From Tubulanus polymorphus (taxonomy: Eukaryota > Animalia > Nemertea): a stretch of 64,000 nt of DNA. Shown here piece by piece: positions 1,944-44,735 of the stretch (positions are counted from its first letter, which is position 1; every line of letters begins with the position of its first letter). The DNA lies in assembly GCF_964204645.1 (NCBI RefSeq), contig NC_134032.1, positions 5,630,275 through 5,694,274 of the forward strand. The letters are read 5' to 3'. The position numbers and the translations under genes are program-made. A model generated the notes under the pieces. The model was not told the DNA's origin, did no database searches, and worked only from the letters and a program-made list of their open reading frames with translations.

Positions 1944-3978
1944 GACGACACGTTGAACGTTGAAATAATCAAATTGAATGAACATGTCAAATATTATGTA
2001 GTTTTGTTTTAGATATAAAACAATGAATGTTTTTTTGAAAATAAATTTGTTGGCAGTTCAGAAATGTTGACTCTGATGATATTCTGACGTGAACATTTAT
2101 CAAGTGCGTGCCGACGCATGCATGCATTGAAATATCGGCGCGCGCGCGTTCAACATTCCTAGAATTTGCGCGGGAACTGGCATACCGGCGCAAAAATCAA
2201 TGAGTCATATACATTTTATATATTTAACTAGCGCGCTGATATTTCAATGCTTGTATAGTATTCCTAGAATCTACACTGGAACGCTGCGTGAAAATCAATA
2301 AGTGAGTCATCAGGTTTCTCAATGTGTTGCTACCTGCAGTGTTACGACCGTGTCGTTATCGTGGCATCTACTCGCTGTAGTATAAAACGTAATAATATAA
2401 ACAACAAGCCTATACTTGTGCTGCCAACAAGGATAAACTCATAAACCATCATGGATCTCACTATTGACTCAATTACGTGCATTTTTAATTACGTGCATTT
2501 TTACGAACGTATCTCCAACACTAAGGATACGTTCTTATAGATTTGGTCAATAAATACGTTCGTAAATCTAACTTTGAAACGGTGGGTATTGATCATCTTG
2601 GGTGACTGGAATGAACCATCCCCTTTCATGGCTTCTTTGTGATCTCAGTTAATAGAAAATCACTGCATTAGATACCCAAGATTGATAAAATTCCAACGAA
2701 AAAATTAATTTCCGCTGATTTTTAAGTCTTCACAAAAGTGAAATTGATAGGCTTTTTTCGGAAAAAATTATCAAAATGTCAATCAATTGTTTTGTTTTTA
2801 TGCAATTATGACACAAATACTTCAAATAAATTGTATATTTTATTATCTTAATTGCAAACAATAAAGTGTACAAGTATGTCAAACATGTATACCAGAAAAT
2901 CAAGGCTTGATAGGTGCACACCACTGACTGAGAAATTTTCATATTAAAGTGCAAAAACTATCTTTAGCTTACCATTTTCTGAAAAAACAAAGTCTATAAC
3001 ACATGTTATTCAAAAGAAAACATTATTATTTAAAAAATAAGTTTTTTACATCCCAAGTAGATTTTGGGTCTATTTACTGTGAAATCTGTCCTACGTGGGC
3101 CTATATCATATTATTATACATATATAATATTTATAGTATATTACATCGAGTATGTTGAGTTTCCTAATTCAACAACGTTGGTGCTACTTTATGAAATTGG
3201 ACAAATATTTAAGAAGAAAGTAGACTGGTTGCCGGTCTCTTGGACAGTCTAAGAGAGTCGAAATAGGGAATTTTTCTAGCGTTCAGATGCAAAGAGAAAT
3301 AAAACCCATAAGAAAAAAGATTTTTAGAAAGATAGGCCTAGTGAATTCTTCATCGCTATTGCACTTTTGCACCCCCTTTTCTATAAATGTTTATTTTTGC
3401 GTATTAATTGTCAGGGAGGTTTAGGGATTCAAAATCAGTAACTTTTGACCAAAAAGCTTACATTTTCTATTTTATAATTTCGCTATTTTGGGCCATGACA
3501 ATTGGAAGTTCGCAAAAACCAAGTTTTCAAACATAACCATTTCTTGAAATGACGTGTTAGGATGTAGGCTATTACTTAACTTAAATGTGTAGCTTGTGAT
3601 TTAAAGATGTTCTGATGAAGGCAAGTTAAAGCTATATCATCAGATGAAAACCATCGAAGACTTGCGAGACACTCCAAAGTGATCCAGACACACTTGAATC
3701 TTGGTCTTCAAACTGGCAATTCTCGTGAAGTGTGAACGCCTGAGGATCGGTAAATACCACCAGCCCCGTCAGCCAGTTGAGGGTCCAATGTTGGCCTTTC
3801 AGTCAGTTTTGAGCAGTTCTGAACTGTTACAAATGGGGTGGTAAATTTTTTCCTCGACCTCAGCTGCTCTACAGGAAAGGCAGGCTGAATCCTCCTTCAG
3901 GTTCCAATCTGTATAGGGAGTTTGGAAGTGTTGCAACCTGAGCCTGGTTTAAAGTTATGTGTTATTTATTTGATACAG

Positions 3979-4145
3979 AGTTAACGGATGACGTTCTTGG
4001 TGACTATGTACGAAACCGGTTAGAACTACTGGACGAGCTTGTCGCGCACGCACCTGACAATGACTGGTTCCGCTGGTGCGATAAGCGTCAGCTATTGGGC
4101 AGAACATGCAATGCCAACAAACAGAAAAAATCTGCGGGAACAATT
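3979..4145 (+). CDS. Internal coding exon of the zinc-finger gene (shared N-terminal part; LTDDVLGDYVRNRLELLDELVAHAPDNDWFRWCDKRQLLGRTCNANKQKKSAGTI)
   Basis: Acceptor ttatttatttgatacAG (AG 3977-3978), open frame (ORF 3957-4178), consensus donor GTAAGT at 4146 in phase 0, compatible with the next exon. Upstream exons not identified. Confidence 0.7.
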
Positions 4146-4946
4146 GTAAGTTTCCGAAAAAAACTAGATCGGTTTTAGATTAGATACTGACTGGGTACCC
4201 TCATTTAATTCAGGCCTAAAGATTACTCCAAATATTTGGGACGAGTGGGCTGAATCTTACGTACCAATTCAGTAATGATTTAACCCTTTACCGCGGCATA
4301 TTCTGAGGCATATTTCACCCTATCCAATTGGGTGTGTTCTAGACCCCATATCTCCTATTTATTATAACAAAGACATTGTTATGGTATGAGTAAACTTAGT
4401 AGATCATTTATTGTAAATAAAAATGAATAAAAAATGATCAAAACATCCAAACTCACTGTTTTCTTTCGTATTTAACACATCGAATTCCGGGGCGACCCCT
4501 ACCTAGCCACTGAGTGGGGGTGGGAAAAAAATCAGGGTGATTTGGCCTGATATCAGGGAATTCATGAACTGAATCTGTTTCTATTTTGTTCCCTGACAGT
4601 TGGCTATCATTACCTGTCCGCAAATACTTCAATACCGCTAACTGAGTCAGTCTGAATAAAGCCTTTTGTTTCGTTGATATTGTATTGACTGGCGGCCATT
4701 GTTCATTCACAAAGTTCCACTTCAAACGGTATTTCGTTGCTATTTTCTAAAGTAAAATCCGTTTTTCTTTACAAACCCGGAAATGTTTACTTATTTACCA
4801 TGTAATGGCTATATCAGATACGACTGGCTAAGTCGTGAAATTATATCATTCATGCTGGCTATGACTCCTAAATCCACTTTAGATTTTCATCACTCCAATT
4901 ATCTGGATTGATTTTCTCTGATAATTTTTTTCTTGCATTTTTCCAG

Positions 4947-5055
4947 ACGGAAGAGAAATATTTCAATATTCTACGCTCAGACGCACAGGAGACTCTAGCA
5001 GCTGAGGCTCCTGTGGAGGAAATAGTTAAAACTACGATTCAGAATCTAGTGAAAG
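4947..5055 (+). CDS. Internal coding exon of the zinc-finger gene (TEEKYFNILRSDAQETLAAEAPVEEIVKTTIQNLVK)
   Basis: Strong polypyrimidine acceptor tttttcttgcatttttccAG (4945-4946) in phase 0; donor AAAG|GTATGT at 5056 in phase 1; lies in ORF 4908-5147. Confidence 0.75.
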
Positions 5056-5632
5056 GTATGTGCGCGAAAAATGTTTGCTATTCAGAGAATTTGGAATACT
5101 TACTTAATATTATTCACTGCACTTATCCGCAAATAAAAAGTAGTTAAATCCCCCATAGACGTCATCAAGTTACCTACTAGTGATTTCATCTAAAGACACG
5201 TCTTGAATAGCTAGATCATACACAATTCCAGAGTACGTATGGCCACTCATTAATCCCCCGATAACATCGTGAAATTATGTGCTAGTGACTTGATCTATAG
5301 ATATTTCAAGAAGAGATGGCTGCCTCCATAAATCCCACTATGACATAATTGGGTTATAGTTCCTTCGAGAAAAGATGTCTGCCTCCATGATTCCCCCTAT
5401 GACTACCCTGAATGTAGTTTAATGTGTGCAGACAATGATTTTGAGAATCTTATGTTCATCATGAAGGTTTCAATAGTTTGAAAAGCAAGTTAAAACAACA
5501 CGGCACATTGAAAATTATTTGGTTGAAATCTTTTCGAGTATTAAAAAAAGCTCTTCCAAATCGGCACGAATCGATTGAAGAAAAACCAAAATTCCATCAT
5601 TTACACAACGTGTTGTTTTTTCTTGGTTGCAG

Positions 5633-7815
5633 ATGAATTGATTCATCGCAGTGTCCGTGACAAATTTTCCGATCATTCTCTGAAGCCATGGCGCACTGGT
5701 GTTGTTGGCACACTTGACGATAGTGCCGAGTTATGGAACAAAAGTGTCGTGAATGGTCTTGTAACGTACCGGTGTTACGTCTGTTTTGATGAATTTCCGA
5801 GGGCCGACGATGTAGTGGTGCATTTATGTTCCCATGACGTCTACAACGCCCCCGATTTCAAGTGCAAGAAATGCGGCATCTCATGCTGCTCCAAACAGAA
5901 TTTGACATGTCATTTGGCATCGCATGTAATCACAGTTTACACGTGCACCACATGTGGGGATAAATTTGTTCGTTTGAGGAATCTGCGCGTACACATGAGC
6001 ACAGTGCACGCGCGCACACTGCCTTGTAAATGCCACCGCTGTGCATGCGAATTCAATACCAATGCTGAGAAACAAGCGCATGTTCGCATCACACATGTCG
6101 GACGACGACATCAGTGTTTGGCATGTGCATCCACGTTCGCAAATCCGACTCGGATGTTTGCGCATATGCTGAACGCGCACTCGTCACAAGTGCATGTCGC
6201 AGCCGGGCAGTGCGGGTTTACAATCAACGGGCAACTGGTGACCTCAATCGCGCAGACGGAGGTTGGTCAGGCAGGAGGCAAGCGGACGGAGATCAGGCGG
6301 ACGGAGGTGGCTCAGGTGGAGGTCGCACAGATGAAGGACAGGCAGACAGAGGTTGGCCACACAGATGTTGCACACACAGAGATCACGCCAAATCATAGTG
6401 AAAATTGTGAACTAACTGATGATGGCGATGATGAAAATGATATTAAAAAACGGACGAAAGTGAAAGGGAAATACGCGTGCGCCGAATGCGAATTGAATTT
6501 TGCTCGGAGGTCTGACTGGGGCGCGCATATGAAACACCTACATGCAGTTAACACCCCCTATCAGTGTCAACTGTGCGACGACAGAGCATATGGGAGTTTC
6601 GCTGTTTTGCGACGCCACTGTAAATCCAAACATGCCAGTTATAAGATAGCGACAGACGGAACGCTGACCTTGCTGGGCGACGGACGGGGAGAGCGACCCG
6701 CGCTGTTTCGATGCGACTTTTGTGCATGTAATTTCCACGAGAATTACAGTTGGAAGCTTCATATGCGCGATCAGCACTGCATCCTTAAACCGTACTCATG
6801 TAAATTATGTGACACCATGTTCGAGAAAATCTCCGAACGTACAGAGCACGTGCGACAACATCACCTCGAGACTATAACATGTGAATTATGCGGTTTTGTT
6901 GATGATGACTTGTTTGTATTGAATCAGCATCGTGCAATGCACCTGACCCGGTTGCTGCGCGGTTTACCAATCGTGGCTGTTCAACGAAACACGTTTAAAT
7001 GCGGGCGTTGCGCAAAATTGTTGCGCTCGTCAAGTGATATACGTCGGCACATGCGTAATGCACACGCCCTCAATGTTGCTTTCACTTGCCGCCGGTGCGA
7101 CCTTGAGTTTTCAACCTTCTCAGAGAAGCGAGCGCATGAAAAAAAGCACGGCACGCGACAGCACGAGTGCGACCAGTGTGGGAAGGTGTTTGCACGTCCC
7201 GGTCGGCTCGCAGAGCATCGTGCGTTGCACACCGCCGGTACACCCGCAACGAGAAACATGGACACAAATTTCGTGTGCGATATTTGCGGTAAGAGCTTTG
7301 CACGAAAAAGCACGCTGGCTTGGCACCGGAGAATCCACACCGATCATTTCAAATGTCCGTACTGTGACCTGGTCGTGCATTACGCCTCGCGTCTAAGAGA
7401 GCATGTAGCGTCTCGCCATCCTGGCAAGTCATATTACTCATGTACGGCGTGTGCACGAATGTTCGTGACTGCAGACACTGCCAGTCAACATATCGATGTT
7501 TGTGCGGGCAGTTCAATCGTTGAGGCGTTGTCGACCAATTGGTCGCAGTTTGTTTGCGATGTCTGCTCAAAGGTGTTCGCGTCGAAGCGGTTTTTGACTG
7601 CGCACAAAAAGGTGCACCTCGCTGCCACGAAACGGTACACATGTAAGGAGTGCCCGCGTGTGTACACAAGTGCGGCATCGCTGCGGGAACATGAGAACGT
7701 GCATCTGGGTGTGCGCCCGCATATCTGCGACTACTGCGAAAAGTCGTTCATTTATAGATCGGGATTGCGAATTCATATCAAACGTAATCATAAAGACCCA
7801 ATATGCGTTAATTGA
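5633..7815 (+). CDS. C2H2 zinc-finger terminal exon A (about 19 fingers, one C2HC)
   Basis: ORF 5575-7815 with repeated C-x2-C-x12-H-x3/4-H motifs; acceptor tgttttttcttggttgcAG| at 5631-5632, phase 1; stop TGA at 7813-7815. Confidence 0.92.
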
Positions 7816-8029
7816 ATAAGCCATCGTTAATGCTATATAGATCGCTATATGAACTATTAATTTGTTGTTGTACAAAATAGAAATAGCGCAGTCAGTTGCT
7901 GTGATTTAAATTGAAGACCAGTGTAAACCTGTTTTGTTTCTATTATCGTCTATAGCCAACTTCATATTTTAAATATAGCTGCAAAGCAGCGATAACGGGT
8001 TTTCTGCACAGTCTTAGAATCCTGTTCAA

Positions 8030-8275
8030 CGGTGGATTTCGACGAAGCATTTGATAAGGCACAACATCAGCCATTACTAAACAGGCTATTAGGAAACAGT
8101 ATCAATGATAGGTCGCCCAAATGGCTCAGCAGTTATCTCTGAACAAAAACTTGTAGCCAAAATCAACGGAACGCCTCATCTTGGAATAAGTCGGTCAAAC
8201 TAGTGGAGTCACGCAAGGTAGTATCCTAAGTTGTCTTCTGTTTAATGTCCTGACAAATGACATACACAGTAATCC
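8030..8275 (+). pseudogene. Fragment of CR1/L2-like non-LTR reverse transcriptase carried inside H1 (also about 11860-12105 + and about 44140-44375 -)
   Basis: With frameshifts translates to VDFDEAFDKAQHQPLLNRL..I....KWLSSYL...KING....TSGVTQGSILS.LLFNVLTND, matching the LINE RT DFxKAFDxVxH and SGVPQGSxLGPxLF motifs. Confidence 0.8.
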
Positions 8276-9324
8276 AACATATACCAGACCGAGTAAATTT
8301 CCAAATCGACCTTAACACGCTGTTCGACCAAAAAACTTAATGTTCCAACAAGAAAATCTTGTTCGAATGAAAATAATTCTGTTTGATCGAACAATACGCT
8401 TTTGCTTGAACCAAAAATTTTCTTCATTCTGACAAAAAATGTGTTCGAATAAAAAGCTGTTATTGTTGAAATGAAAAATTTTTAGTCCCGGCAAAAAAAT
8501 TTGGTTGAGCGAAAACAATTTTTTCGAACGAATGTTTGAATGAAAACAATTCTGTTCGATTGAACGAAATACTTAATACTTTCGGTTCGGAAAAAAAACT
8601 TTTTTCAATATACTTGTTGGAACGAAAAACTTAATGTTCTGACAAGAAAATTCTGTTCAAATTAAAACGATTCTGTTCAATTGAACGATTGTTCGAACGA
8701 AAAACCTTTCGTTTGGACAAAAAAAAAAGTTTGTTCAACTTTGTTCTAACGATTTTTTCAAATTGGTTCAATCGTATAGAATATTATTGGTTCGAACGAA
8801 ATAAATTTTGTTCCGACGAAAGAATTTTCAAGCGAAAGGTCTTTTGAACGAAAAAAAAAGATATTTCTGGTGCTCCGCAGTAACTTAAAGCCGGACGTAG
8901 GTTGGTCTTGTGACACGATCCAACTCGAAAAGTTGCCATATTTATGTCGACATACCGCAATTTATCGCGTCAAGTCGACATGAATATGTCGATATATCGT
9001 GACGTTTTGACGACATATTTCGTTTTCTCAACCATTTTCCTCGCGACAAGTCGACATATTCATGACGACTTGAAACTCAGTCGTCATATTACTGGCGTCC
9101 TCATCTAACATTTAGACATGTCTTCAAATGACGACTTGTTCCGTGGAAAATGAGCAAAAAAGCGAAATTTGTCATATATATGGCGACATGTCGAGTTTGA
9201 ACGCGACAACTCGAGGCCCTTTATCACTTCCGTACTATATCAGATTAATCGACTTCAAAATAGGCGAAAGCATAAGTCTTTATTACGTTATTAATTGGCC
9301 TAATTATTCAAAAGCTAATAAAGT

Positions 9325-10480
9325 GGGCGACAAAACCAAAAAAATTAATTGTCGCGGCGATAAAACCAAAATAATCAATTGTCGCGGGCAACAAAACCAA
9401 AAAAAATGAATTGTCGCGGGCGACAAAACAAAAATCTTGAATTGTCGCGGGCGACAAAACCAAACTAATGAAATGTCGCGGGCGATAAAACCAAAATAAT
9501 GAATTGTCGCGGGCGATAAAACAAAAATAATGAATTGTCGCTGGCGATAAAACCAAAATATTGAATTGTCGCGTGGGACAAAACCAAAATATTGAATTGT
9601 TGTGGGCGATAAAACCAAAATAATGAATTGCCGCTGGCGATAAAACGAAAATATTGAATTGTCGCAGGCGATAAAACCGCGGCAAAAAAAAAAATTGTCG
9701 CGGGCGATAAAACCAAAATAATGAATTGTTACGTGCGACAAAACCAAAATAATGAATTGTCGCGGGCGATAAAACCAAAATATTGAATTGTCGCGGGCGA
9801 CAAACCGAAAATATTGAATTGTCGCGGGCGACAAAACCAAACTAATGAATTGTCGCGGGCGATAAAACCAAAATAATCAATTGTCGCGGGCGATAAAACC
9901 AAAATAATCAATTGTCGCGGGCAACAAAACCAAAAAAAATGAATTGTCGCGGGCGACAAAACAAAAATCTTGAATTGTCGCGGGCGACAAAACCAAACTC
10001 ATGAAATGGCGCGGGCGATAAAACAAAAATAATGAATTGTCGCGGGCGATAAAACCAAAATATTGAATTGTCGCGGGCGACAAACCGAAAATATTGATTT
10101 GTCGCGCGTGACAAAACCAAATTAATGAATTGTTGCGGGCGATAAAACCAAAATAATCAATTGTCGCGGGCGATAAAACCAAAATAATCAATTGTCGCTG
10201 GCGATAAAACCAAAATATTGAATTGTCGCGGGCGACAAAACCAAAAAAATTAATTGTCGCGGGCAATAAAACCAAAATCTTGAATTGTCGCGGGCGACAA
10301 AACCAAAATAATGAATTGTCGCGGGCGACAAAACCAAAATAATGAATTGTCGCGGGCGATAAAACCAAAATAATGAATTGTCGTGGGCGACAAAACCAAA
10401 ATATTGATTTGTCGCGGGTGACAAAACCAAATTAATGAATTGTCGCGGGCGACAAAACCAAAATTATTGTTTTGTCGCGT
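9325..10480. repeat. 31-bp tandem satellite, array 1 (about 37 units)
   Basis: Unit approximately AAAACCAAAATAATGAATTGTCGCGGGCGA(T/C), head to tail, with internal palindrome TTGTCGC-GG-GCGACAA. Confidence 0.95.
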
Positions 10481-12184
10481 TATTTTAGTTTTGTCGTTTT
10501 GTCATAATGTCGCCCTCATTTGCATATACATGTTTTTTTACGCATGGCCCTTATCAGCCACCATACTAAAGCCTTAAGGTCGCGTAAAACTCGATAAACT
10601 CTTCAAGCGACACAGCGAACGATCTCCTTTCCCCCACAGCGAACGCTTAACCTAGTAGAGGCTACTAGCATATGTAGGCCTATGTATATGCGTAGGCCTA
10701 ACATCTGGACAGATTGGTCGTAGGCCTATTGAATAACAACCCACCTAAATATTGTAAATTTTGTTTTGAAGTTCAATCCAATGAGTCCGTTAATAAACGC
10801 AACAATTATACCTTGTTTGTTTGAGACAGTAAAGCTCAGTACTGGTAGGCCTAAAGCCGCGTCAAACTCGATAAACACTCCAAGCGACACAGCGAACGAT
10901 CCCTTTCCCCCACAGCGAACGCTTACTCCGAATGTCAAGTGTGAGTCCAGCATACGGAAAGGATTGTGTTGTATACTTGTATTTAGTAAATACCTTGTGC
11001 ATATGACAATGATCGGTATGTACTGTAGGAAATATAGAGTATTGATGGTATTGATATAGAGGTTGAAGCCCGCGGCCGAATAAAGTAATATATTCTTTCA
11101 TTTTGATACCTCGTCGACATAACAGCTTTTCTCCGCTATATCTCTACGGCGTGTTTAGTTTAGGCCTACGACTCCCCGGTACACTTATGATTTATCTTAG
11201 TAAATACACGGTTAATTTGATAAAGAAAAATAGGCATTGCTAAACTAATTGCATGACGCCCGCAGCCAAATCACTGGTAGTAATAAATTAATTTGTACTC
11301 GATTTGATTCTCATGATGAGTTGAAACTCGCAGCTGATCCCCGGAACGACGATATAGTGACACACGTCGATTCGTCGATGTTTACGGCTCGACAGTGCTT
11401 TTAAAATCTAAAGTAGTAAATTTCCTGTATATCGGTAATACGAATTGATGAGGAAAATGGGCTATTGTTAAAATTATTTTTTAAAAACTGCGACAGAATG
11501 TGCAATCTTTGGTTAATAAATTTGTTAATTTATGCTTGAATTGATAATTGATGTGACAAGAAACGTGCGGTAGATTTCGAAAAGAGGACTTAGAAAAACA
11601 TGTCGGCTCTTTGAATGGGGCTCAATTTTCGATGTTTTCGGCCCGACAGTGCTTTTGTAACGATGATTCTTCAAAAAACGCATGGGGTATTTGTAGATCG
11701 AAGTTAGCTGAATGATATCAGACGGATTGTATCGACAACGGCATCAAGGTAACAAAGCCTTGGTTCTTTTAGTAAAAATAGTGTGGAAGAAAATAATAAT
11801 AAATATAGCTGCAAAGCAGCGATAACGGGTTTTCTGCACAGTCTTAGAATCCTGTTCAACGGTGGATTTCAACAAAGCATTTGATAAGGCTCAACATCAG
11901 CCATTACTGAACAGGCTATTAGGAAACAATATCAATGATAGGTTGCCCAATTGGCACAGCAGTTATCTCTGAACGGAAACTTGTAACCGAAATCAACGGA
12001 ACGCCTCATCTTGGAGTGAGACGGTCTTACTAGTGGAGTCACGCAAGGTAGTATCCAAGTCGTCTTCTGTTTAATGTCCTGACAAATGACATGCACAGTA
12101 ATCCAAAATATACCAGACCGAGTAAATTTCCAAAACAACCTTAACACACTGTTCGACCAAAAACTTAATGTTCCGACAAAACCA

Positions 12185-13700
12185 TGGGCGACAAAACCAA
12201 AATTATGAATTGTCGCGGGTGACAAAACCAAAATATTGAATTGTCACGGGCGACAAAACCAAAATAATGAATTGTCGCGGGCGATAAAACCAAAATAATG
12301 AATTATCGCGGGCGATAAAACCAAAAAGAAGAATTGTCGCGGGCAATAAAACCAAAATAATGAATTGTCGCGGGTGACAAAACCAAAATATTGAATTTTC
12401 GCGGGCGACAAAACCAAAATATTGAATTGTCGCGGGCGACAAAACCAAAATGGTGAATTTTCCAGGCGACAAAACCAAAATGGTGAATTGTCGCGGGCGA
12501 CAAAACCAAAATAATGAATTGTCGCGGGCGATAAAACCAAAATGATAAATTGTCTCGGGTGACAAAACCAAAATAATGAATTGTCGCGGGCGATAAAACC
12601 AAAATAATGAATTATCGCGGGCGATAAAACCAAAATATTGAATTGTCGCAGGCGACAAAACCAAAGTAATGAATTGTCGCGGGCGATAAAACCAAACTAA
12701 TGAATTGTCGCGGGCGATAAAACCAAAATAATGAATTGTCGCGGGCGACAAAACAAAAAAAAAATATAAAACCAAAAAGAAGAATTGTCACGGGCGACAA
12801 AACCAAAAAGAAGAATTGTCGCGGGCGACAAAACCAAAATAATGAATTGTCGCTGGCGATAAAACCAAAGTAGTGAATTGTCTTGGGCGATAAAACCAAA
12901 ATATTAAAATTTCGCGGGCGACAAAACCAAAATAATGAATTGTCGCGGGCGATAAAACCAAAATATTGAATTGTCGCGTGTGACAAAACCAAAATAATGA
13001 ATTGTCGCAGGCGACAAAACCAAAATAATGAATTGTCGCGGGCGATAAAACCAAAATGATAAATTGTCTCGGGTGACAAAACCAATATAATGAATTGTCG
13101 CGGGCGATAAAACCAAAATAATGAATTATCGCGGGCGATAAAACCAAAATATTGAATTGTCGCAGGCGACAAAACCAAAGTAATGAATTGTCGCGGGCGA
13201 TAAAACCAAACTAATGAATTGTTGCGGGCGACAAAACCAAAAAAAGAATTGTTGGGGCGACAAAACCAAAATAATGAATTGTCGCGGGCGATAAAACCAA
13301 AATAATGAATTGTCGCGGGCGACAAAACAAAACAAAAATATAAAACCAAAAAGAAGAATTGTCGCGGGCGACAAAACCAAAAAGAAGAATTGTCGCGGGC
13401 GACAAAACCAAAATAATGAATTGTCGCTGGCGATAAAACCAAAGTAGTGAATTGTCGTGGGCGATAAAACCAAAATATTAAAATTTCGCGGGCGACAAAA
13501 CCAAAATAATGAATTGTCGCAAGGGATAAAACCAAAATAATGAATTGTCGCGGGCGATAAAACCAAAATATTGAATTGTCGCGTGTGACAAAACCAAAAT
13601 AATGAATTGTCGCGGGCGATAAAACCAAAATATTGAATTGTCGCGTGTGACAAAACCAAAATAATGAATTGTCACGGGCGACAAAATCAAAATCATTGTT
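12185..13700. repeat. 31-bp tandem satellite, array 2 (about 49 units, with higher-order duplication)
   Basis: Same unit as array 1; rare variant units recur in the same order about 0.5 kb apart (e.g. AATGATAAATTGTCTCGGGTG near 12541 and 13054). Confidence 0.95.
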
Positions 13701-15682
13701 TTCTCACGTTATTTATTTTTGTCGTTTTGTCGCCCTCATTTGCATATTCGTGTTTTTTTATCTTATCAGCCACCATACTAAAGCCTTAAGGTCGCGTAAA
13801 ACTCGATAAACACTTCAAGCGACACAGCGAACGATCTCCTTTCCCCCACAGCGAACGCTTACTCCGAATGTCAAGTGTGAGTCCAGCATACGGATAGGAG
13901 TGTGTTATATACTTGTATTTAGTAAATACCTTGTGCATTTGACAATGATCGGTATTTACTGTAGGAAATATAGAGTATTGATAAATGGTTGAAGCCCGCG
14001 GCCGAATAAAGTAATATATTCTTTTATTTTGATACCTCGTCGACATAACAGCTTTTCTCCACCATATCTCTTCGGCCTGTTTAGTTTAGGCCTACGATTC
14101 CCCTGTACACTAAAAATTTATCTTAGTAAATACACGGTTAATTCGGTAAAGAAAAATTGGTATTGTTAAACTAACTCCTTGAAACCCGCAGCTAAATCAC
14201 TGGTAGTAATAAATTAATTTGTACTCTATTTGATTCTCATGATGAGGAGAAACTCGCAGCTCATCCCCGGAACGTCGATGTAGTAACACACGTCGATTCG
14301 TCGATGTTTACGGCTCGACAGTGCTTTTAAAATCTAAAGTAGTAAATTTCCAGTGTATCGGTAATATGATTTGATGAGGAAAATGGGCTATTGTTAAAAT
14401 CACTGTTTGAAGACCGCGACTGAATGTGAAGTCTGCGGCAATAAATTAGTTCATTTATACTTGAATTGATAATTGAAGTGACAGTCGGCCTGCGGGTTGA
14501 TTTCGGGATGACGACTCGAAAAACATGTCGCCCCATTGAATGGAGCTAAATTTTCGATGTTTACATCCCGACAGCGCTTTTGTAACGATGATTCGTGAAA
14601 AAACACGCGGGCTATTTGTAGATCTCAGTGAGCTGAACGATATTATATGGATTGTATATGAAACAGCGGTAAGGTAACAAAGCCTATGTTCTTTTGGTAA
14701 AAATAGTGTGGAAGAAAATAATAATAATAATAATCACGCGGATGAAAATAATAATAATAATAATCACGCGGATATCAATAGGGTTTTCTGTGAAATAACA
14801 GAAAACCCTAATAATAATCACGCGGATATCAATAGGGTTTTCTGTGAAATAACAGAAAACCCTAATAAGGTTGCCACTAATAAAGACACAATGAATAATG
14901 TAAGATCACTTATGAACTTATGCTTTAATTGAGCCCTGGTCTTAGTTTAAGTTGAAGGATTAATTTGAGATTTGAAATAGTTTAAGATTCTTATGTCATT
15001 AAACCAAATTTTGATCAGATGAATTCAATGCCATCAAAAAAGAATTTTTGAAAAACGAAAGCGTTGTTATCTATATCTTCCTAAACCTTCCCACAGTGTT
15101 CCTGCTGATCTCAGAAAATCAGGGAGCTCTGAGACATTCTTAAAAGTCAGGGAATTGAATTTTTGGGGTCTTGTTGTTCTTGCTGGTGATAATTGGCACA
15201 AGGAACCTCTTTATTAAAAGGATATCTGAGGATATGTTATGATTGATTCAGAAATATTTGGTTGATAGATCGAAGGAAAATCAGGATATGAAATATCAAT
15301 TAAACCAACATATAAGTCGAGATTTTAATACCGGATTTTACCACTGAAATATGGACGGACTTGTACACTGATTACAGATTTCTACTTAGTATTTTCAGGT
15401 CAAAACAATTGATGATTAATGAAGTTTTATAACAAATTCTACAAATCTGAAAAGACAGCGCTCACCTTCTTACTGCTATGATAATTTAGAATAGATAATC
15501 ATAATTCATGTTAAATGAAGTCATTTTATGAAAAAAACTTACATTTATTAAATGTGTTTAAGTTTCAAACGCTGCTTTACTTGAAATGGTGCATTCATCC
15601 ATGTGCGCTAGCGAGCATCCCTTAATACTTAAGTTTGTGTATAGTGTGTGAATCGCACTACAGTATGGTAGTGTATACCTGA

Positions 15683-15710
15683 GTGTGTGTGTGTGTGTGC
15701 GTGCGTGAGT
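15683..15710. repeat. (GT)n/(GCGT)n microsatellite
   Basis: gtgtgtgtgtgtgtgtgcgtgcgtgagt. Confidence 0.9.
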
Positions 15711-16048
15711 ATGTGAAACAGTCTATTGGTTACCACAGCAGCAATCGTTATCAAAAGAAACTATTCGGTAAAACAATACCAATACAAATAATTATACTCC
15801 TGTAAGAAGGGACTCAACGTATAAGCCGGATGTACATTAAAATCTCGAATTCAAGGCCTAAAATGGACTTCAACTCATACGTCACGTAGACTTATATGCC
15901 GGTAGGGATCAACTATCGATTTTGAATTGCCTGATCTGTAAGAACCTTGAAGTGTATCTTATAATCTAATCAGGGATATCCTTTTTAGGGCCCTGTTGGC
16001 AACCACACGTGCGCACAGCTCTCAACCACTCCTGCTTTCTATTTTCAG

Positions 16049-17973
16049 GACGAAAAAGAAAGTGTTTCGTTATCGCTGGCGATGATGTGGTTGCCAAAGA
16101 GGCGATTGATCGCATTGTGCGTACGGCTGTTGCCAGCAGCGACACCGCTAAAGATGCTGGAGTCCAGGTGAAGGGGGTCACTGTGGAAGATGAGGAGAAT
16201 GAGGATGTTCTGTATCAATGTGGTCAGTGCGACATGAGGTTCCCTAATCGCTCTGAGGTTCTGGTGCATGTTCAAACGCATACGTCAGATGCGATCTATG
16301 ATCTGTGTAATGACTGCGGGTACATGGGCATGTGCGCGCAGGATTTAAACGCGCACGCATGCGCCGGCACAATTGGTACCAATACAGTGCCAGGTACCGC
16401 GATTAAACAGGCGCACTGTCCTATTTGTAACACACCATACAGCACGGTGAACTATCTACGTGTGCACCTGCGCAATATGCACCAGTTTACAGTGCTGTAC
16501 GCATGCGACCGATGCCCGATGCGCTTCGAGACAAACGCTGCAAAGATCGCACATTCACGTGCTACACATGTCGGCCGCAAACACGTGTGTGCGTACTGTC
16601 CGAAAACGTTCCAGTCTCCAACCCTTCTCTATGGGCATATCGCAATCAGACATAAGAAGAAGGTCATTCCAGCTGGCTCCGAGGTCAAGGGCGGAGCAAA
16701 TGTACATGTGGTTGGGTCGATAGCCGATTCAGAGATCATTGTGGGTGGTGTGCCGGGGCCGTCACCAGATCAGAGTGCGCCCGACGTACCTCTGGATGGA
16801 AAAGGAGCAAAAATTGGAATGGAATTGAAGCCCGATTGTATGCGATGTGGTATATCATTCCAATCTATGTCTGATTATCGTAACCATGTGAAGAATCAAC
16901 ACGGCAATGTTCACGTATGCGAATTCTGTGGCAAAGCTTTCAAAACATTTGCGCGATATGGAAAACACATCGGCACGCACACGACGCGGGTGCTACGTGG
17001 CCTCGCGCCAGTCCCTGACGCTGATGCGATCAACAAGAATAATTGGTACATCTGCGATCACTGCGGTAAAGAGTCATACTGTTTGAGTCACCATCGTAAA
17101 CACGTTCTCAACGTTCACAAGCTGCTCGTGCGTTTTAAATGTGAACGATGTGGCGAAACATTCAATTCATCGGCCGAGAAAAAGGCGCACCGCAAACGCC
17201 ATGCACCAATCACGCATCCGTGCACAGTGTGTGGCGCGACTTTTGCGCGGCCAGCGTTGCTGCGTGCGCATACGCGTGTTCACACGCCTGCTGCTGGGCC
17301 TAGATCATTCATCTGTGCGGAATGTGGCAAGACGCTGGTTAACGCGAGTGCGTTGCGTGTTCACCGCCTGCGGCATCACCGGGCGACTGACACGCTGTTA
17401 TCACATCAATGCGCGCAGTGCGAATTAACATTCCCAGACGAAGCAAGTCTGTGCGAACACCTGGACGTACACGGCTCTGCCACATTGGCTTGCCCGTTCT
17501 CAAACAATGGTTGTGACTACACAGCGAATCGTAACGACCTCCTGGAGGATCACGTCATAGGCGTGCACAAGGCCCCGAAGATCTACCCATGTGCCACGTG
17601 CGGCCAGATGTTTGCACTGTGCGAGTTTGCAAATTGTCACGAGTACAAGTGTTCGAAACCGAAACGAACAAGGGTTAAGGCTATAAAACGTCCGCAGCCG
17701 GCAGACTGGCCGTGTCTGCTGTGCGATAAGGTATTCCCAGTGAGGCGGTATTTGACACGACATCTGAAGCGGCACTCGGGTGCACGACCATTTAAATGCG
17801 ATCTGTGCGATAAAGGCTTCACAACGAAATCAACGCTGAACGAACATAAGAATCTTCACTCGGGAGAAAAACCATTTGTCTGCTCATTGTGCAATGTTGG
17901 GTTCGCTTACAACGCCACACTACGACAACACAACAGACGACATCACCCAAAACAACCATCAAAGGCATCATGA
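16049..17973 (+). CDS. C2H2 zinc-finger terminal exon B (about 17 fingers, including C2HC variants)
   Basis: ORF 16009-17973; acceptor ctgctttctattttcAG| at 16047-16048, phase 1; canonical HSGEKPF linker at the C-terminus; AATAAA at 17993 just after the stop. Confidence 0.92.
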
Positions 17974-17974
17974 G

Positions 17975-18290
17975 ATTCCCCTCTGTCATCATAATAAATG
18001 TAAGATCCCCCTATGACATCAAAATACGTGTTAGATCCCCTACGACATTTTAGTACGCGTTAGATCCTTTGATATAGAATGTGTTGCCCTATGACATCAT
18101 AGTACGTGTTAGTTCATTCTATGGCATAATCATAGTATGTGTTAGATCTTCTTGGAAATCATAATACATGTTAGATCCCTCTATAACATCATCAATCCCC
18201 ATATGACGTAGTGTTACCACTTGCACAACCCCTGCCATATACGTTCAAAAGGCTGTCTTCATTAATCCCCCTTATGCCATCATAATGAAG
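17975..18290. repeat. Degenerate short tandem repeat family (GTTAGATCCCCCTATGACATCA-like); related tracts at about 5145-5405 and, inverted, about 37770-38190
   Basis: Recurrent atcccc(c)tatgacatca motif; reverse complement tgatgtcatagggga at about 37930-38160. Confidence 0.65.
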
Positions 18291-19562
18291 TTTATCCTGT
18301 GCAAACTTCTGAAATAGATTGATACCTCAAATTACCCATATGTAAGTTTATAGGTTGTCATGAATTACCACATGTTAGTCATGATTTACCACATGTTACT
18401 TCCGTGTTGTTGAAAACAATGGTGCAACATTGAAACTGGCAATAAATGTCAAATATCATACATATTTTTTTTTTTTTACAATTGTTTCTCCTTTGATAGT
18501 ATGGATTGAAAATGCACCTAGTCAAAATGATACTTTGGTTTGTCAAAATTTCCTCTAAAGGCATTCAATCTCAATCCATACCGTGCCTAATGTTGAGCTT
18601 TTATTGGTTTACCTTTGTCAGCATTATGAGGTTGGCATTGAGCCAATTCATGTAAAATCTCGGTTGGTTTCTTTATGTGAGCATTTTTGGTTTACCTTTG
18701 TCAGCGATATGATGTTGGCATTGAGCCAATTCATGTAAAATCGCGGTACGTTTTTTTATGTGAGCATTTGTTTCATTGCTTCTCGGCTTAAACAACGTAT
18801 AATCGATGCGATTGAAGACATGGCAAACCTCCATCGATGACATGGTCAACTGAGTTAAAATTCTACGAAAAACTGTTTTTGGCGGGAAAATTCTTAGCTT
18901 TCGCGTATAAGATTGCAATTACCTCGATTGGGGGTGTCGTCTTTACGAGAGAATGGGATTGGCTGTTTTTGGAATATACGGGGAATTCCGGCGCTACTAA
19001 AATAATTATGGGAAAGCCATTGAATGGCGAACGTTTCATTTAGGTGCCGTATACGTGCGAATTCCAAATGCTCATTGCTGGTGAGGATGTAATTATTTCA
19101 CACATCTGCCATAGGTATTGTTTCATTTTAATACTCGGTGATTGTTTTGATTGACATTGAAGTGTAAGCAAACATTCACTTACACGAGGCCTCCACGTGC
19201 ATGCGGAGTGCTACACGGCACACACACAAGCTCGTACAGTACACTATTAAAGGTGATGCTGTAACACGTGCAGGTTTGACATGAAAATAGGCTGAGTAAT
19301 CGTAGCAGAAGATGAGCGCTGTGTTTTCTGTTTTATAGAAATTGTAATAAATTGTAATTTCTTGTGACCTGAAAATATTAAGCAGCAAACTACAAGTATA
19401 GGTCGAGGTCTGAATATTCTAGTCGTAAATTCCAGGATTTAAAACGATCTAATAGCCGATTTCTTCTGTACCGGTATTTTAACTTCCGCGGCCAACATTG
19501 GAAGAGGTTTCCGAGACCCAATATTCAGCCATCCTCTGATATGTGACATCATATAAATTTTA

Positions 19563-20122
19563 GGCCATCCCATATTAATGGTCTGTTTGCCGTAACCCCG
19601 ACCGACCCGAATTCAAAGGAACCGAGTGAAAACTTTTTTTTTGGGATTCATTGAAATAAATTTTATTTTTGATAATGGCTGACCGACCAACCCGACTGCC
19701 GACGTATGAGCTACGTATGTTTGAAATCAAGTGTGCATCGTGTGAAAACATGCCTTGACATGTGACCTAATTTAAGTTTTCCAGGAAACAGGCAGTGTTC
19801 CAATAAGCTGCCATTTATTCTCATAGTGACTATATTAAAGCTGGTAACGTAAAAGCGCACACATATTCAATGTACTGTTTCATTTTTAACAGAGAGCTAT
19901 GACGCTCTGGACGAAGTTATAATTTTAGAATAATTCTCGAAATCTACGCTATAAGACAAATTTCCCGTGCACAACGTAGATGATTTTTGCGATATTGTTT
20001 CCATGTAAAAAAGGTGATTAATTTTTTTTTGCCCAAAAATTATGCAAAAAAAATTTCTACCTACCTACCGACTCATCCTGAAAAGTTGAGTCGGTGTTAC
20101 AGCCAATTATTTTGGGATGGCC
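19563..20122. mobile_element. MITE with GGCCATCCC TIRs and TTA target duplication (PIF/Harbinger-like)
   Basis: TTA-GGCCATCCC...GGGATGGCC-TTA; the paralogous site near 21190 is empty (gaatt-TTA-tttgaa). Confidence 0.8.
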
Positions 20123-21418
20123 TTATTTGAATATTTTTTTCATATTTTGACACATTTTTTTTGAAAATATAAAATATTTTCCCTGCCGCGCCTACCTGTA
20201 CCCTACAAAATTTTGGACGTGGACCGTAACCAAATGTATATCTTTGGTCTTATTTGACTACGAAATAATTCTTTGAGAAAGATGAAATACAATATAAATT
20301 TGTGGAACTTTGAAGTCACAAATTAAAAAGATTTTTCAAGCAATGCCCTTATTCCAAACAACCTCTAGCTTTCAAGGTAAACCACACTTTGCCCATGGGC
20401 AATTTATTTTCATTTGTTCTTGGGTTAAACGACATATAATCGATGGGATTGAAGACATGACGAATCTCCGTCGATGACATTGTCAACTTGGTTTAGATTT
20501 GACGAAAAACTATTTTTGGTGGGAAAATTCTTAGCTCTTGCGTATAAATTGCATTGACCTCGATTGGGGGGCGTCGTCTCTATGAGCGAATGTGATTGGC
20601 TGTTTTTGGGATATATGGCACGACTAAAATAATTATGGGAAAGCCATTAATGGCGTACGTTTCATTGGACTAGGTGCCGTATGTGTGTGTGAATTTAAAT
20701 GCTCATTGCTGGTGAGAATATGATTATTTCACATATTGCCAGTCCTGGTGATTGTGTTGATTGAGATTGTAGTGAAGCGAGCGTTCACTACACAAGGCCT
20801 CCACGTGCGCGGGTTGGGAGTGCTAAACATTAGACTGATGCACACACAAACACACGCTCATACAGACTTCTATATGGTGATGCTGTAACGCTGCTTGGCG
20901 CGTGCACGTTGTGTATGATAACAGGCTGAATAATTGTCGTAGCAGAAGATGAGCGCTGTGTTTTCTGTTTGATAGAATTTGTAATACGTTGTAATTTCTT
21001 GTGACATGAAAATGCTAAGCAGCAAACTATAGGTATAGGTCGAGGTCTGAATATTGTAATGGTAAATTCCAGGATTTAAAACGATTTAATACTACGCCCC
21101 GGTGTTTTAGCTTCCGCGGCCATACATTGGAAGAGGTTTTGTTTCCAAGACCCAATATTCAGCCACCCTCTGATATGTAACATCATATGAATTTTATTTG
21201 AATATTTTTTCATGTTGTGAAAAATAGTTTTTTGAAAATATAAAATAGTTTCCCTGCCGCTAGGGTACCCTAAAAAATTTTGGATGTAGACCATAAACAA
21301 ATGTTTATCTTTGGTCTTATTTGACTACAAAATAATTCTTTAAGAAAGATAAAATACAATATAAACTTCTAGAACTTTGAAGTCACGGATTAAAAAGATT
21401 TTTCAAGCAGTGCCCTTA

Positions 21419-21726
21419 AGGTCGGCCTTGCTACAGCTTGCGACTCACTGCGACCGCCATCGACGATCGCGTCGCAACGACTCACCGACCTACGCTACCT
21501 TGCGACTGCCAGCGACGGGTTGCGACTGCCAGCGACGCCAGTCGCAATGAGTCGCACATGTTCTACTTTCTGCGACGCGACCGTCGCAACCGACCTGCGT
21601 GCTATTGCGACTGGCAGCAACTAGTCGCACACAGTCGCTGACAACCGCATCGCAACCGACTTGCGCGGCCAGTTGTGACGCAACGCGACGATCGCGTCGC
21701 GTCGCAAGGCCGACCTACGCCCGGCT
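21419..21726. mobile_element. MITE family Z (AGCCGGGCGTAGGTCGGCCTTG TIR), TTA TSD
   Basis: TTA at 21416-21418 and 21727-21729; empty paralogous site gccc-TTA-ttcc near 20345; full copy at 43193-43520; truncated end near 8888. Confidence 0.8.
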
Positions 21727-22491
21727 TTACTCCAAACAAACTCTAGCTTTCACCAAGCTCTAGCTAACCACACTTCACCCATGGGCAACTTATATTTTGA
21801 GCAACAGGACCTTTGGTCCTCTAGTATAAAATCAGACAGCTAATTGCAAAAAATATCAAATTACTGAGAAACAGATATCATGAGAAAAAAGGTAATTAAT
21901 TACATACAATCTGAATCACTGAGGACGAAATTTAGCTGGTAGTTGGTTGTTTAAATACATTGAGAATAAATCAACCATGTTCAAATGACCCATGTTCAAA
22001 TAATTGTTGATTGAGAGAGGTGTTGTGCTTTGATTAATAGTGCTTTAATTTTCATTAGATTAACATCTAAATCCAAAGATCCTTTAAAATTTTGAATTTC
22101 TGTTCACCTTAAGCAACCTGACAAACATGGAAATTTGAAAGATGTTGACCGATTGCTGAAGTCTAAAGTTTATGCTCCTTGACCCTTAGGGTTGCTGCTA
22201 GATATTAAAACTCCCAAAAACGTTCTCAAATTTGATAAGATTTGTATTACTCATTAGAAAATCAGATTGGCTCTGTTTCTGCTTCTACGGATTTTCAACA
22301 ATTTTTCTATTTTTAAATGATATCTTTTGCACCAAGGCGTCGTTACTATTTTCTAAATGCATTCAACCAATAATATGAAATTGAATAAAATATTCACAAA
22401 TCTTGTATTGAAAAGAACATCTATTTTTCAGGAGAAATGTTCGAATTCAGGATATATAATTAATGTCGCTGTTTGTATTTTATCGATTCAG

Positions 22492-25400
22492 ATTTTGGGA
22501 ACTCAGCGCCAATGACTGCCAAAGTGGATGTGGATGAATCAAAAGTGTTCGCAGATCAGTTCCTAGACAACGGTTCGCCTGAAGATGATAGCATATTTGA
22601 CGGCGGCGCCACTAGTACCATGTTCGACGTGCCCGAGGAGACGTGCGAGTCCATACCGAAGTTCGACAACACAGAACCCGATAAATTAATATACCGGTGT
22701 TTCCAGTGCGGGCAGGATTTCGAAACGCGTGTTGAAATCATGATCCACATCCGTTCGCACTCAGAGGTTCCGATACACGACATTTGTCAACACTGCGGGC
22801 AAGCGTGTGTCAGTGCCGACGAGATGCGCGAACATGCGGCTACATGCGTCGCACCGGCCGCGGCTGCGTTGCGCCGCACAGCATCACGCAAACGCGAGAA
22901 AACTGCGTACACATGTACAGTGTGCGGAGAGCGCTACCAGAGTCTGATGTACTACCGTCGCCATATGGCAAACCAACACGACGTTGTCGTTCCCTATACT
23001 TGTAAAAAATGCGGCGCTGAATTCGCAACAAATGTCGATAAAATGCTGCACCTGCGCACACACCAGGCAGATGATGCGCACCAGTGCCGGCACTGTGGGA
23101 AAACGTTCAAGTTCCAGTCATTGTTGTTTGCGCACATCGACATGTACCATGCGAAGATCATGATAAAAAATGAGAATAACGAATATGTTGTCAATGAGCA
23201 GGCATTGAATATCAAAATGGATGACGGCGCTGCGGTCGCAGCCTCACCGGTCATCGGGCGCCCGGTGGTATCGTCGGACAATGTCGAGAATGTGCCTGTG
23301 ATAGAGGGTGCTGCTGCTGACACAGCTGAACCGACGACCGCTGAGATATTCGGACAGGAAGTGCCAGTTTCGCGAATTGATATCAAATCAGAGACGAATA
23401 CCGAAGAGAACGAACAGGAGGAGGTCGCAATGGAAACAGCGAGTAGTGCCGACCTAGAGGGTGATAATGAGAATGTAATTGAAGACGGAGTTGTAAAGGA
23501 AGAAGGAGAGGTCAATGACAGTGAAGTGGAAATAGAGGACAACGATGAGAAGGATGATGGCGATGAAGATGAGGGAGAGGATGAGATGGATGATTATGTT
23601 TATAACAGTGATGATGAAGACTCTGAGGATGAGATGTTTTGTCCGATCAAACAAGTTGAGAATGTGAATTTGAACAACGTGGAAGACCTCGAGGAAATCA
23701 AAATGAAAATGCGGCAAAATCTATGCCCGAAGTGTGGCGCTTACTTGAAAAAGATGGCTGATCTGCGACGGCATTACCAGGTGAACCACGGTTTGAATTT
23801 GCCATATTTCTGTTCGCTGTGCAATGACAGCGCATTTGCGACCGCGCGCCACTACAACAATCATAATGTCGTCGTCCACAACAACACGAGCGCAGTCGAC
23901 ACTGACATACTGACGCCGGCTTCGCGAAAACGTAACGCCGACCGCGCGCCAATTCAATGTGATATTTGCAAGCGCAAGTTCTCGCGTTGGACGCTTTTGC
24001 GGAGTCACTATCTGACGGCGCATGGTGTCAAAATGCAGTATAAATGTGAAAAATGTGACCACACATTCGCTACAGCCGAGGAGAAAGTTGAACACCGCAA
24101 AACGCACGGTCTGATGACGTATAAGTGCGATGAGTGTCCGCGTATGTTTCGTCGGCCGGGACGACTAGTTGTACACAAATACGAACACCTGCGCAAACGC
24201 GGCGAGACATTCCACGATTCAGATGATGACACGGCGACTACAAACACTGGCGATGCAGCTGACGGATCTGGACAGACATATGCATGTAAACAATGTGACC
24301 AGAAATACGCTAATAAATTCCTGCTGCGCGAACACCTGAATAGCGACCACGCGATTTTGTTGCCATACAATTGTAAGTACTGCACAGAGAGTTGTCCGAC
24401 CGCATTGGCCAAGAAACAACACATGGCTGAACACCTGAAAGATAAAATCTGCGACGTTTGTGGCTGCGCGTTCATGACAACGGAGAAGATGATTCAGCAC
24501 CGCGCGACACATGTCAGTCGCGTGCTGAAAGGCTTGGCACCGGTTGCACCGCATCGTGAACCGAATGCCAAGCCAGTGAGTCGCACAGTAAAATGCAACA
24601 TATGCGAGCATGTGTTCTACAAGAACGCGAAGCTACGCGCACACTTACTCAATGTGCACGGCATTGTATTAAAGTTCAAATGTCGTCGATGCCCGCTGAA
24701 GTTTGTCACAATCGACGAGAAGTACGAACACGAACGCGGGCACCCTTTGCCGGTACACACATGCCCGCACTGCGGCAAATCGTTCAACCGCCCCTACAAG
24801 CTCAAGTGCCACATACGCACGCACACAAAAGAACCCCGCGACCCGAATGACCCAGCTGATGGCGTAAGGTACATGTGCGATGTTTGCGGTCGTGCACTGC
24901 GTTCGGCTGCGACATTCAAGCGCCACATGGAGCTTCACACACGTACTGGCGCCGAAACATACCCATGTAAAATATGCGGGAAGCTGTTCCGTTCACGTAG
25001 CTCGGTGTATTCGCACATTCGTGTGCACGATGCCAAGTACAACGAGTGTGAGATGTGCAACTTCACAACGCCGTACAAGTATCGTCTGCGTGACCACATC
25101 GCTGCCGTACATGTCAATGAACGCGCATTTGAGTGCCAGATCTGTCAGAAGGCATTTACACTCGAGAAACTGCTGAAGAATCATCAACGCTCATGTCACG
25201 GTCTCATCCAAGAGAATGGCGATTATATTCAACTGGAGTGGCCGTGTTCGCTGTGCGATAAGAAATTCACAGCCAAGCGGTACCTGGCGTTGCATCTGCA
25301 TCGGCACGACATGCGCGCACAGGGTAAGAAGGAGTTTTTCTGTACGCTGTGCGACAAGGGCTTCACGGCGAAGAACTCGTTAAATGAACACATGAACATG

Positions 25401-25520
25401 CACACGGGCAAACGCCCGTACTCATGCCCCTTCTGCCCGCAGAAGTTCCCAAACTCGGCCGGGCTTTTCATGCACAAGAAGAAGATTCATCCGGATCTTG
25501 TCGGGCGACCGGCTAATTAG
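22492..25520 (+). CDS. C2H2 zinc-finger terminal exon C (about 23 fingers plus a long acidic region)
   Basis: ORF 22473-25520; acceptor tttgtattttatcgattcAG| at 22490-22491, phase 1; HTGKRPY linker; D/E-rich tract at about 23400-23640. Confidence 0.92.
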
Positions 25521-41500: not shown

Positions 41501-41755
41501 ATTAAAAAGTTTCTTTCCAGTTAGAAATTAATTAGATCTTTAAAACTTTTCATTGAAAAGATCGAATGAGGAAAACGCCTCCAATGTCAACAGAAGTAAA
41601 TAAATTGCCCATGGGCAAAGTGTGGTTTACCTTGAAAGCTAGAGCTAAAAACAAATTTTTCACCTTTGGGCTTTTTTACATGGAAACAATATCGCAAAAA
41701 AAAATCATCTACGTTGTGCACGGGAAATTTGTCAGCGTAGATTTCAAGAATTATT

Positions 41756-44433: not shown

Positions 44434-44735
44434 CTAAAATCATAACTTTGTCCAGAGCGTCATCTCTGTGTTAAAATTGAAACAGTACATTGAATATGTG
44501 CGCGCTTTTACATTACCAGCTTTAATACAGTCACTATTAGAATGAATGACAGCTTATTGGAACACTGCCAGTTTCTTGGAAACTTAAACTAGGCCACATG
44601 TCAAGGCATGTTTTCACACGATGCACACTAGAATTCAAACGTACGTAGCTCATAGTCGGTCGGCCGTTTTTATCAAAAATAAAATTTATTTCAATGAATC
44701 CCAGAAAAAAGTTTTCACTCAGTACCTCTGAAGTC

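What the first reader, a model, noticed from the sequence alone, without database searches (positions are those of the whole stretch)
3979..25520. One gene with three interchangeable giant zinc-finger cassettes: shared 5' exons plus mutually exclusive terminal exons
Seen: exon 4947-5055 ends in a phase-1 donor (AAA G|GTATGT). All three finger ORFs lack a convincing ATG start of their own and begin right after a pyrimidine-rich AG in phase 1 (5633: G|AT=D; 16049: G|GA=G; 22492: G|AT=D). Each has its own stop. The spacers 7816-16048 and 17974-22491 are largely transposons, and I find no duplicate of the two small exons there. Known: Drosophila lola, broad, fruitless and mod(mdg4) join a constant BTB N-terminus to alternative zinc-finger 3' exons, typically of one or two fingers. 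Inference: this locus uses the same logic with 17-23-finger cassettes and a constant region I do not recognise, so splicing or polyadenylation choice would swap the whole DNA-binding array. An annotation pipeline would probably split it into three genes.
Basis: partly seen in the sequence, partly recalled or inferred. Interest (0 to 1): 0.88.

Follow-up and report, generated by a model that had tools for sequence, protein, structure and literature searches.

The report
Ribbon-worm gene, three giant zinc-finger tails
One gene of the ribbon worm Tubulanus polymorphus joins a short shared front part to any one of three very large last exons, each coding a different array of 17-23 zinc fingers; this is the layout of the fly gene lola, but built on an unrecognised front domain and with far larger swappable parts.

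Summary
Observation confirmed, interpretation supported. The window is from the nemertean Tubulanus polymorphus. A 102-codon constant region (ATG exon 1.4 kb left of the window, then 3979-4145 and 4947-5055) ends in a phase-1 donor. Three intact, collinear paralogous ORFs (19, 17, 23 fingers; 25-31% identical) each start at a phase-1 acceptor and end in their own stop. Exon 4947-5055 is single-copy. The RefSeq model joins 5055 straight to B. In one RNA run the B and C contigs carry exactly 30 and 28 extra upstream letters, which is what a 31-mer graph gives if one donor branches to A, B and C. The letters were not displayed, so the junctions are inferred. RefSeq's B-C fusion is not seen in that run. 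The constant region holds a ~48-residue helical 'WFRW' domain with no Pfam match and 41 matches in this genome; one paralogue has at least 35 downstream finger ORFs. The scan reported this layout before at other loci of this genome; the giant cassettes are what sets this locus apart. Poly(A) sites, tissue regulation and DNA binding are untested.

The parts
3979..4145 (+). Constant coding exon 2 (phase 1 in, phase 0 out); carries most of the ~48-aa WFRW domain. Coding exon 1 (ATG plus 10 codons, phase-1 donor) lies outside the window at G000:C8:5628864-5628894 = L017:8590-8620
   Evidence: residues 12-66 of RefSeq XP_074657127.1; family matches
4947..5055 (+). Constant coding exon 3 (36 codons, linker), ending in the shared phase-1 donor
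   Evidence: single copy in genome
5633..7815 (+). Terminal exon A, coding part: 726 aa, 19 zinc fingers, own stop
   Evidence: RNA run X2 holds 0.56 of the words of 3900-7900 against 0.60-0.62 expected if all exons are present
7816..16048 (.). A-B spacer: dispersed repeats and two 31-bp satellite arrays (9325-10479, 12186-13693)
16049..17973 (+). Terminal exon B, coding part: 640 aa, 17 fingers, own stop; RNA continues unspliced to at least 18409; AATAAA at 17993 and 18441
   Evidence: RefSeq joins 5055 to 16049
17974..22491 (.). B 3' UTR and B-C spacer; high-copy repeats in 18494-21876; unique DNA 21794-22491 without RNA depth in run X2
22492..25520 (+). Terminal exon C, coding part: 1008 aa, 23 fingers, acidic spacer after finger 5, own stop
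   Evidence: RNA contig starts with 26 foreign letters plus AG at this acceptor

Best explanation
A single gene with alternative last exons. One promoter left of the window drives a pre-mRNA whose three small coding exons give a 102-aa constant N-terminus (a ~48-aa two-helix WFRW domain plus linker). The phase-1 donor at 5055 is spliced to acceptor A, B or C. Each is a terminal exon with its own stop, so the isoforms (829, 743, 1111 aa) are mutually exclusive and swap the whole finger array. The three exons arose by old tandem duplication of one terminal exon. Shown: structure, phases, paralogy, transcription of A, B and C, splicing at C's acceptor, B running unspliced through its stop. Strongly inferred: that the partner of all three is the donor at 5055. 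Inferred only: that choice is made in cis by competition between terminal-exon acceptors coupled to polyadenylation; that the isoforms are DNA-binding regulators; and that the WFRW domain recruits a common partner or dimerises, as BTB or KRAB do (about 0.6 for this functional part).
For: Phases and acceptors. Donor exon single-copy. RefSeq XP_074657127.1 joins the constant exons directly to B. RNA run X2: the B contig is 2391 nt, equal to 16049-18409 (2361) plus exactly 30; the C contig has 26 foreign letters plus AG = 28, and the match stops where exon AAG and intron CAG differ. Logan contigs have distinct 31-mers (PMC12424806; a 30-nt overlap is visible). One donor branching to exons that start ATG, GAC and ATT predicts 30 for B and 28 for C; a private donor competing with its own intron predicts 29 and 30. 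A, B and C align end to end at 25-31% identity and are each other's best genome matches. In the paralogue cluster 50 of 57 finger ORFs have their best in-frame acceptor in phase 1 (null mean 23, maximum 38 in 20,000 draws), six linker exons end in phase-1 donors, and one WFRW exon precedes at least 35 same-strand finger ORFs.
Against: The overhang letters were not printed, and the first 1,052 nt of B lay outside the laid stretch, so the 30 comes from subtraction and assumes no indel there. Only one RNA run from one sample; contigs, not reads. RefSeq's model, the only protein found for the locus, fuses B and C and omits A. No poly(A) signal within 1.2 kb after C's stop. Only 3 of 59 fingers are followed by canonical TGEKP-like linkers, so continuous DNA reading is not assured.
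Confidence: 0.88

Rival explanations
1. Three separate genes: B and C have their own promoters or first exons hidden in the spacers (C could start at its Met 7 codons in).
For: C has an early Met. Unique DNA upstream of B holds four GT[AG]AG motifs and was not covered by the read laying.
Against: No RNA depth and no donor motif in 21794-22491; no joint from the spacer into 22492; overhangs of 30 and 28 differ from the 29 and 30 that private donors predict. No WFRW or linker exon copy in the spacers. RefSeq joins 5055 to B.
Confidence: 0.04
2. RefSeq model: constant exons, then B, then C in one 1752-aa protein, through a GC donor at 17965 and a 7-nt microexon at 22432-22438; A is a separate or dead exon.
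For: It is the deposited model XP_074657127.1.
Against: The GC donor is poor (AAG|gcatca) and sits just before B's stop. The RNA contig runs unspliced across it to 18409. The microexon bin has no RNA depth. The microexon ends in T, yet the C contig matches back through AG to 22490. A is intact and transcribed. Contigs can drop rare forms, so a minor B-C isoform is not excluded.
Confidence: 0.03
3. Same three mRNAs, but B and C are reached by trans-splicing from separate pre-mRNAs, as in part for lola, instead of skipping A in cis.
For: lola uses cis- and trans-splicing (PMC1947980). Reaching B or C in cis requires passing A's 3' end.
Against: All parts are in order on one strand within 27 kb, so cis splicing suffices; no sign of spacer-initiated RNA before C. 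Contigs cannot tell cis from trans.
Confidence: 0.05

Closest known systems
Drosophila lola (also mod(mdg4), broad, fruitless): BTB-ZF genes with alternative 3' exons
   Same: Common N-terminal exons joined to unique zinc-finger C-terminal exons, giving mutually exclusive isoforms; lola has at least 20 (PMC1947980).
   Different: No BTB domain (no Pfam match at E up to 10; the constant region is only 102 aa). Cassettes have 17-23 fingers and 640-1008 aa, against the one or two fingers typical of lola (own knowledge). Host is a nemertean, not an arthropod. Trans-splicing untested.
Poly-zinc-finger genes with a lineage-specific N-terminal accessory domain (tetrapod KRAB-ZNF, insect ZAD-ZNF, cyprinid FiNZ-ZNF; PMC10547256)
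   Same: Small N-terminal domain on its own exon, then a large poly-C2H2 exon; many paralogues, partly clustered.
   Different: The domain matches none of these. Those families mostly diversify by whole-gene duplication (own knowledge); here the finger exon was duplicated behind one front end. Few canonical linkers.
Tubulanus WFRW-domain cluster at C8:11.40-11.64 Mb (RefSeq LOC141909519, LOC141909522, LOC141909526, LOC141909538, LOC141910368)
   Same: Homologous N-terminal domain (about 32% over the alignment), phase-1 donor, runs of alternative finger exons.
   Different: Cluster genes have a 400-550 aa linker exon and mostly two-finger tails (range 2-27), with ATG in the domain exon. This gene has a 36-aa linker, an intron within the start of the domain, and three giant tails.

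Membership tests
lola / mod(mdg4)-type BTB-ZF | N-terminal BTB/POZ domain in the constant region | tested here: not met
   No Pfam family for residues 1-103 or for the aligned paralogues; the model is two helices (pLDDT 64)
lola / mod(mdg4)-type BTB-ZF | Constant exons joined to alternative phase-matched terminal exons | tested here: met
lola / mod(mdg4)-type BTB-ZF | Variable exons encode zinc fingers and end in their own stop | tested here: met
   B RNA runs through its stop into 3' UTR
lola / mod(mdg4)-type BTB-ZF | [quoted passage not shown] | not testable with these tools
   needs allele-phased long reads
lola / mod(mdg4)-type BTB-ZF | Tissue- or stage-specific isoform use | not testable with these tools
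   one RNA run, contigs only
KRAB-, ZAD-, SCAN- or FiNZ-type accessory-domain ZNF genes | Recognised accessory domain at the N-terminus | tested here: not met
   No Pfam match; no cysteine pattern of ZAD in the alignment. FiNZ was not compared directly.
KRAB-type tandem finger arrays | Uninterrupted fingers with TGEKP linkers | tested here: not met
   0, 2 and 1 canonical linkers in A, B, C; fingers fall in groups with gaps up to 191 aa
Tubulanus WFRW-domain zinc-finger family | LDELV..A.DN.WFRW-type N-terminal domain followed by a phase-1 junction to finger exons | tested here: met
   (window exon E 1.6e-4 from the cluster query)

The most novel reading that the evidence does not exclude
Nemerteans independently evolved a genome-wide lola-like system on an undescribed accessory domain. 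At this locus regulated last-exon choice swaps whole KRAB-sized finger arrays, so that exon duplication behind one promoter replaces gene duplication as the way to diversify poly-zinc-finger specificity, possibly under diversifying selection at base-contacting residues.
Probability: 0.4. Interest if true: 0.8.

Novelty: new variant of a known kind. Interest (0 to 1): 0.63.

Why it matters
It shows the constant-plus-variable transcription-factor layout outside arthropods and without BTB, so it probably arose twice. It also shows that the variable unit can be a whole 17-23-finger array, which joins two strategies usually treated apart: lola-type splicing and KRAB-type poly-finger expansion. The WFRW domain is a candidate new accessory domain with a testable role. 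In practice, RefSeq mis-models the locus (A lost, B fused to C), so finger-gene counts from ORFs or annotations will be wrong in this animal. I found no paper on it in the searchable library, which lacks most subscription journals.

Tried and rejected
Pfam on the constant region and alignment: nothing. ESM Atlas by features: nothing; structure rows are short matches of low-confidence models and were ignored. AlphaFold on a 7-row alignment: two helices, pLDDT 64, pTM 0.32; Foldseek PDB no match. Search of 1.84 billion representatives with the exon peptide found only the gene's own RefSeq protein plus repetitive, unrelated hits. Word search for other isoforms of this gene: none, so the database gives no A or C-only isoform; this is not evidence of absence. 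The look-up of encoding contigs: not on record. Runs X3 and X4 looked like RNA but several of their contig ends fall on GATC and they cover introns, so I take them for Hi-C and did not use them as expression evidence. The end of the B contig at 18409 is not a poly(A) site: the DNA contig ends at 18406 too, at a repeat. A first acceptor scan that ignored frame was noisy and was replaced by an in-frame test with a null. Spliced-leader addition was rejected by reasoning: a leader joined to many genes would leave much shorter overhangs than 30.
Full report
Source. The exon peptide at 3981-4145 matches residues 12-66 of one protein at 100%, RefSeq XP_074657127.1, LOC141910295, Tubulanus polymorphus. 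The window is G000:C8:5630275-5694274 of a 268-Mb genome.

Observation. The donor at 5055 and the acceptors at 5633, 16049 and 22492 are as described and all phase 1. Each acceptor is the top-scoring AG in the 450 nt before the first finger. The three ORFs are intact and Pfam calls them C2H2 arrays, with 19, 17 and 23 fingers. No other finger ORF lies on the + strand of the window. Neither small exon has a copy in the spacers, and the donor exon is single-copy in the genome. The spacers are 71-81% repeated. Corrections: the first small exon ends at 4145; the ATG exon lies about 1.4 kb left of the window and adds 10 codons with a phase-1 donor; C has a Met 7 codons in.

Origin of the cassettes. 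A, B and C align from end to end with shared odd features, such as an LRGL motif between fingers and the same finger groups, at 25-31% identity. A central piece of B finds A and C as its best genome matches (E 9.5e-15 and 9.1e-12). They are therefore old local duplicates of one terminal exon. Intact frames of 640-1008 codons at that divergence imply long selection on all three (inference).

Annotation. The RefSeq model joins the constant exons directly to B, skipping A. It then leaves B at a weak GC donor just before B's stop and reaches C through a 7-nt microexon.

RNA evidence. Of the runs found, X1 spans introns and is DNA. X3 and X4 have several contig ends on GATC and look like Hi-C. X2 behaves as RNA: no depth in the unique intron 21877-22473. 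X2 holds 0.56 of the words of 3900-7900, where exons alone give 0.60-0.62 and the small exons alone about 0.05, so A is transcribed. I had one laying of under 6,000 letters and used 17101-23050. One X2 contig of 2391 nt covers B unspliced through its stop to 18409, which argues against the RefSeq fusion as the main form. Its length equals 16049-18409 plus exactly 30. A second contig starts at 22490 after 26 letters that do not fit the intron, so 28 upstream letters ending in AG are joined to C's acceptor; exon 4947-5055 ends in AAG, the intron in CAG, the RefSeq microexon in T. Logan contigs come from a graph of distinct 31-mers (PMC12424806). A contig that leaves a branch point keeps 30 upstream letters minus the prefix it shares with its competitor. 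A starts ATG, B GAC, C ATT. One donor feeding all three predicts 30 for B and 28 for C, as observed; private donors competing with their own GT introns predict 29 and 30.

The constant region. It has no Pfam, Atlas or PDB match and models as two helices at low confidence. It is not unique: a paralogous 49-aa peptide finds 41 places in the genome, 15 in a cluster at C8:11.41-11.64 Mb and the rest on at least eight contigs. Comparing coordinates by eye, eight of the dispersed copies besides this gene have a same-strand finger ORF within 10 kb downstream. In 140 kb of the cluster, each domain exon is followed by a long linker exon with a phase-1 donor and then by 1 to at least 35 finger ORFs; 50 of 57 have their best in-frame acceptor in phase 1, against a null mean of 23 and maximum of 38. 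RefSeq proteins confirm domain-linker-finger joins there. I found the domain in no other species, but searched only with single sequences and limited word or length windows.

Mechanism. Most likely cis choice among three terminal exons, by competition of acceptors coupled to cleavage and polyadenylation (inferred from general knowledge of alternative last exons). B has AATAAA at 17993 and 18441; A's nearest is in repeat DNA at 8448; C has none within 1.2 kb. The products would be regulators with one shared interaction domain and different finger arrays. DNA binding is inferred from the C2H2 family; only 3 of 59 fingers have canonical linkers, so some groups may bind protein or RNA.

Comparison. 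It works like lola, where common BTB exons join unique finger exons by cis- and trans-splicing (PMC1947980), but it is not a member: BTB was tested and is absent. It resembles accessory-domain poly-finger genes such as KRAB and FiNZ (PMC10547256) in exon plan and array size, but with a different domain and exon-level duplication. Earlier notes of this scan report the same layout at other loci of this genome; I had reached the family reading before looking (notes), checked the cluster myself, and do not count those notes as support. None covers this locus.

Verdict. Real, a new variant of a known kind. The special feature of this locus is cassette size. Interest 0.63. I left out any search with a joined spliced sequence of my own.

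Noticed in passing
window 17167, 17173, 17174: The only three differences in a 451-nt X3 contig of B are all non-synonymous and fall on helix positions -1 (S to P) and +2 (A to I) of B's eighth finger; an X4 contig starts at 17175, as expected for a heterozygous site. One allele only; a lead for diversifying selection.
   Followed up: partly
G000:C8:11496543-11540000 (L027-L031): One WFRW plus linker front end followed by at least 35 same-strand finger ORFs, mostly two fingers each; next WFRW exon at 11551655.
   Followed up: partly
P0013 (LOC141909522), residues 600-827: A WFRW-family RefSeq protein that ends without C2H2 fingers, in a region with a weak Myb/SANT-like match (E 0.05).
   Followed up: partly
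L012-L014, minus strand, 38-54 kb left of the window: Three finger ORFs (14, 2 and 2 fingers), each with a phase-1 acceptor and no Met before the first finger; probably another gene with alternative finger tails.
   Followed up: no
window 3-1940 and about 700 nt further left: A broken transposase-like ORF (429 aa to a stop at 1292) inside the first coding intron; by eye it resembles Chapaev/CACTA DDE transposases, no Pfam match.
   Followed up: no
window 7966-14815 versus 41750-44440: Much of the A-B spacer recurs inverted near 42-44 kb at 88-93% identity; two 31-bp satellite arrays lie among these blocks, and 8030-8100 looks by eye like a LINE reverse-transcriptase fragment.
   Followed up: no
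window 17965-22491: RefSeq XP_074657127.1 uses a GC donor and a 7-nt microexon to fuse B and C and omits A; it looks like a modelling artefact.
   Followed up: yes
L016, about 12.4-12.9 kb left of the window: A long CAG/GCA-type trinucleotide repeat of over 400 nt.
   Followed up: no
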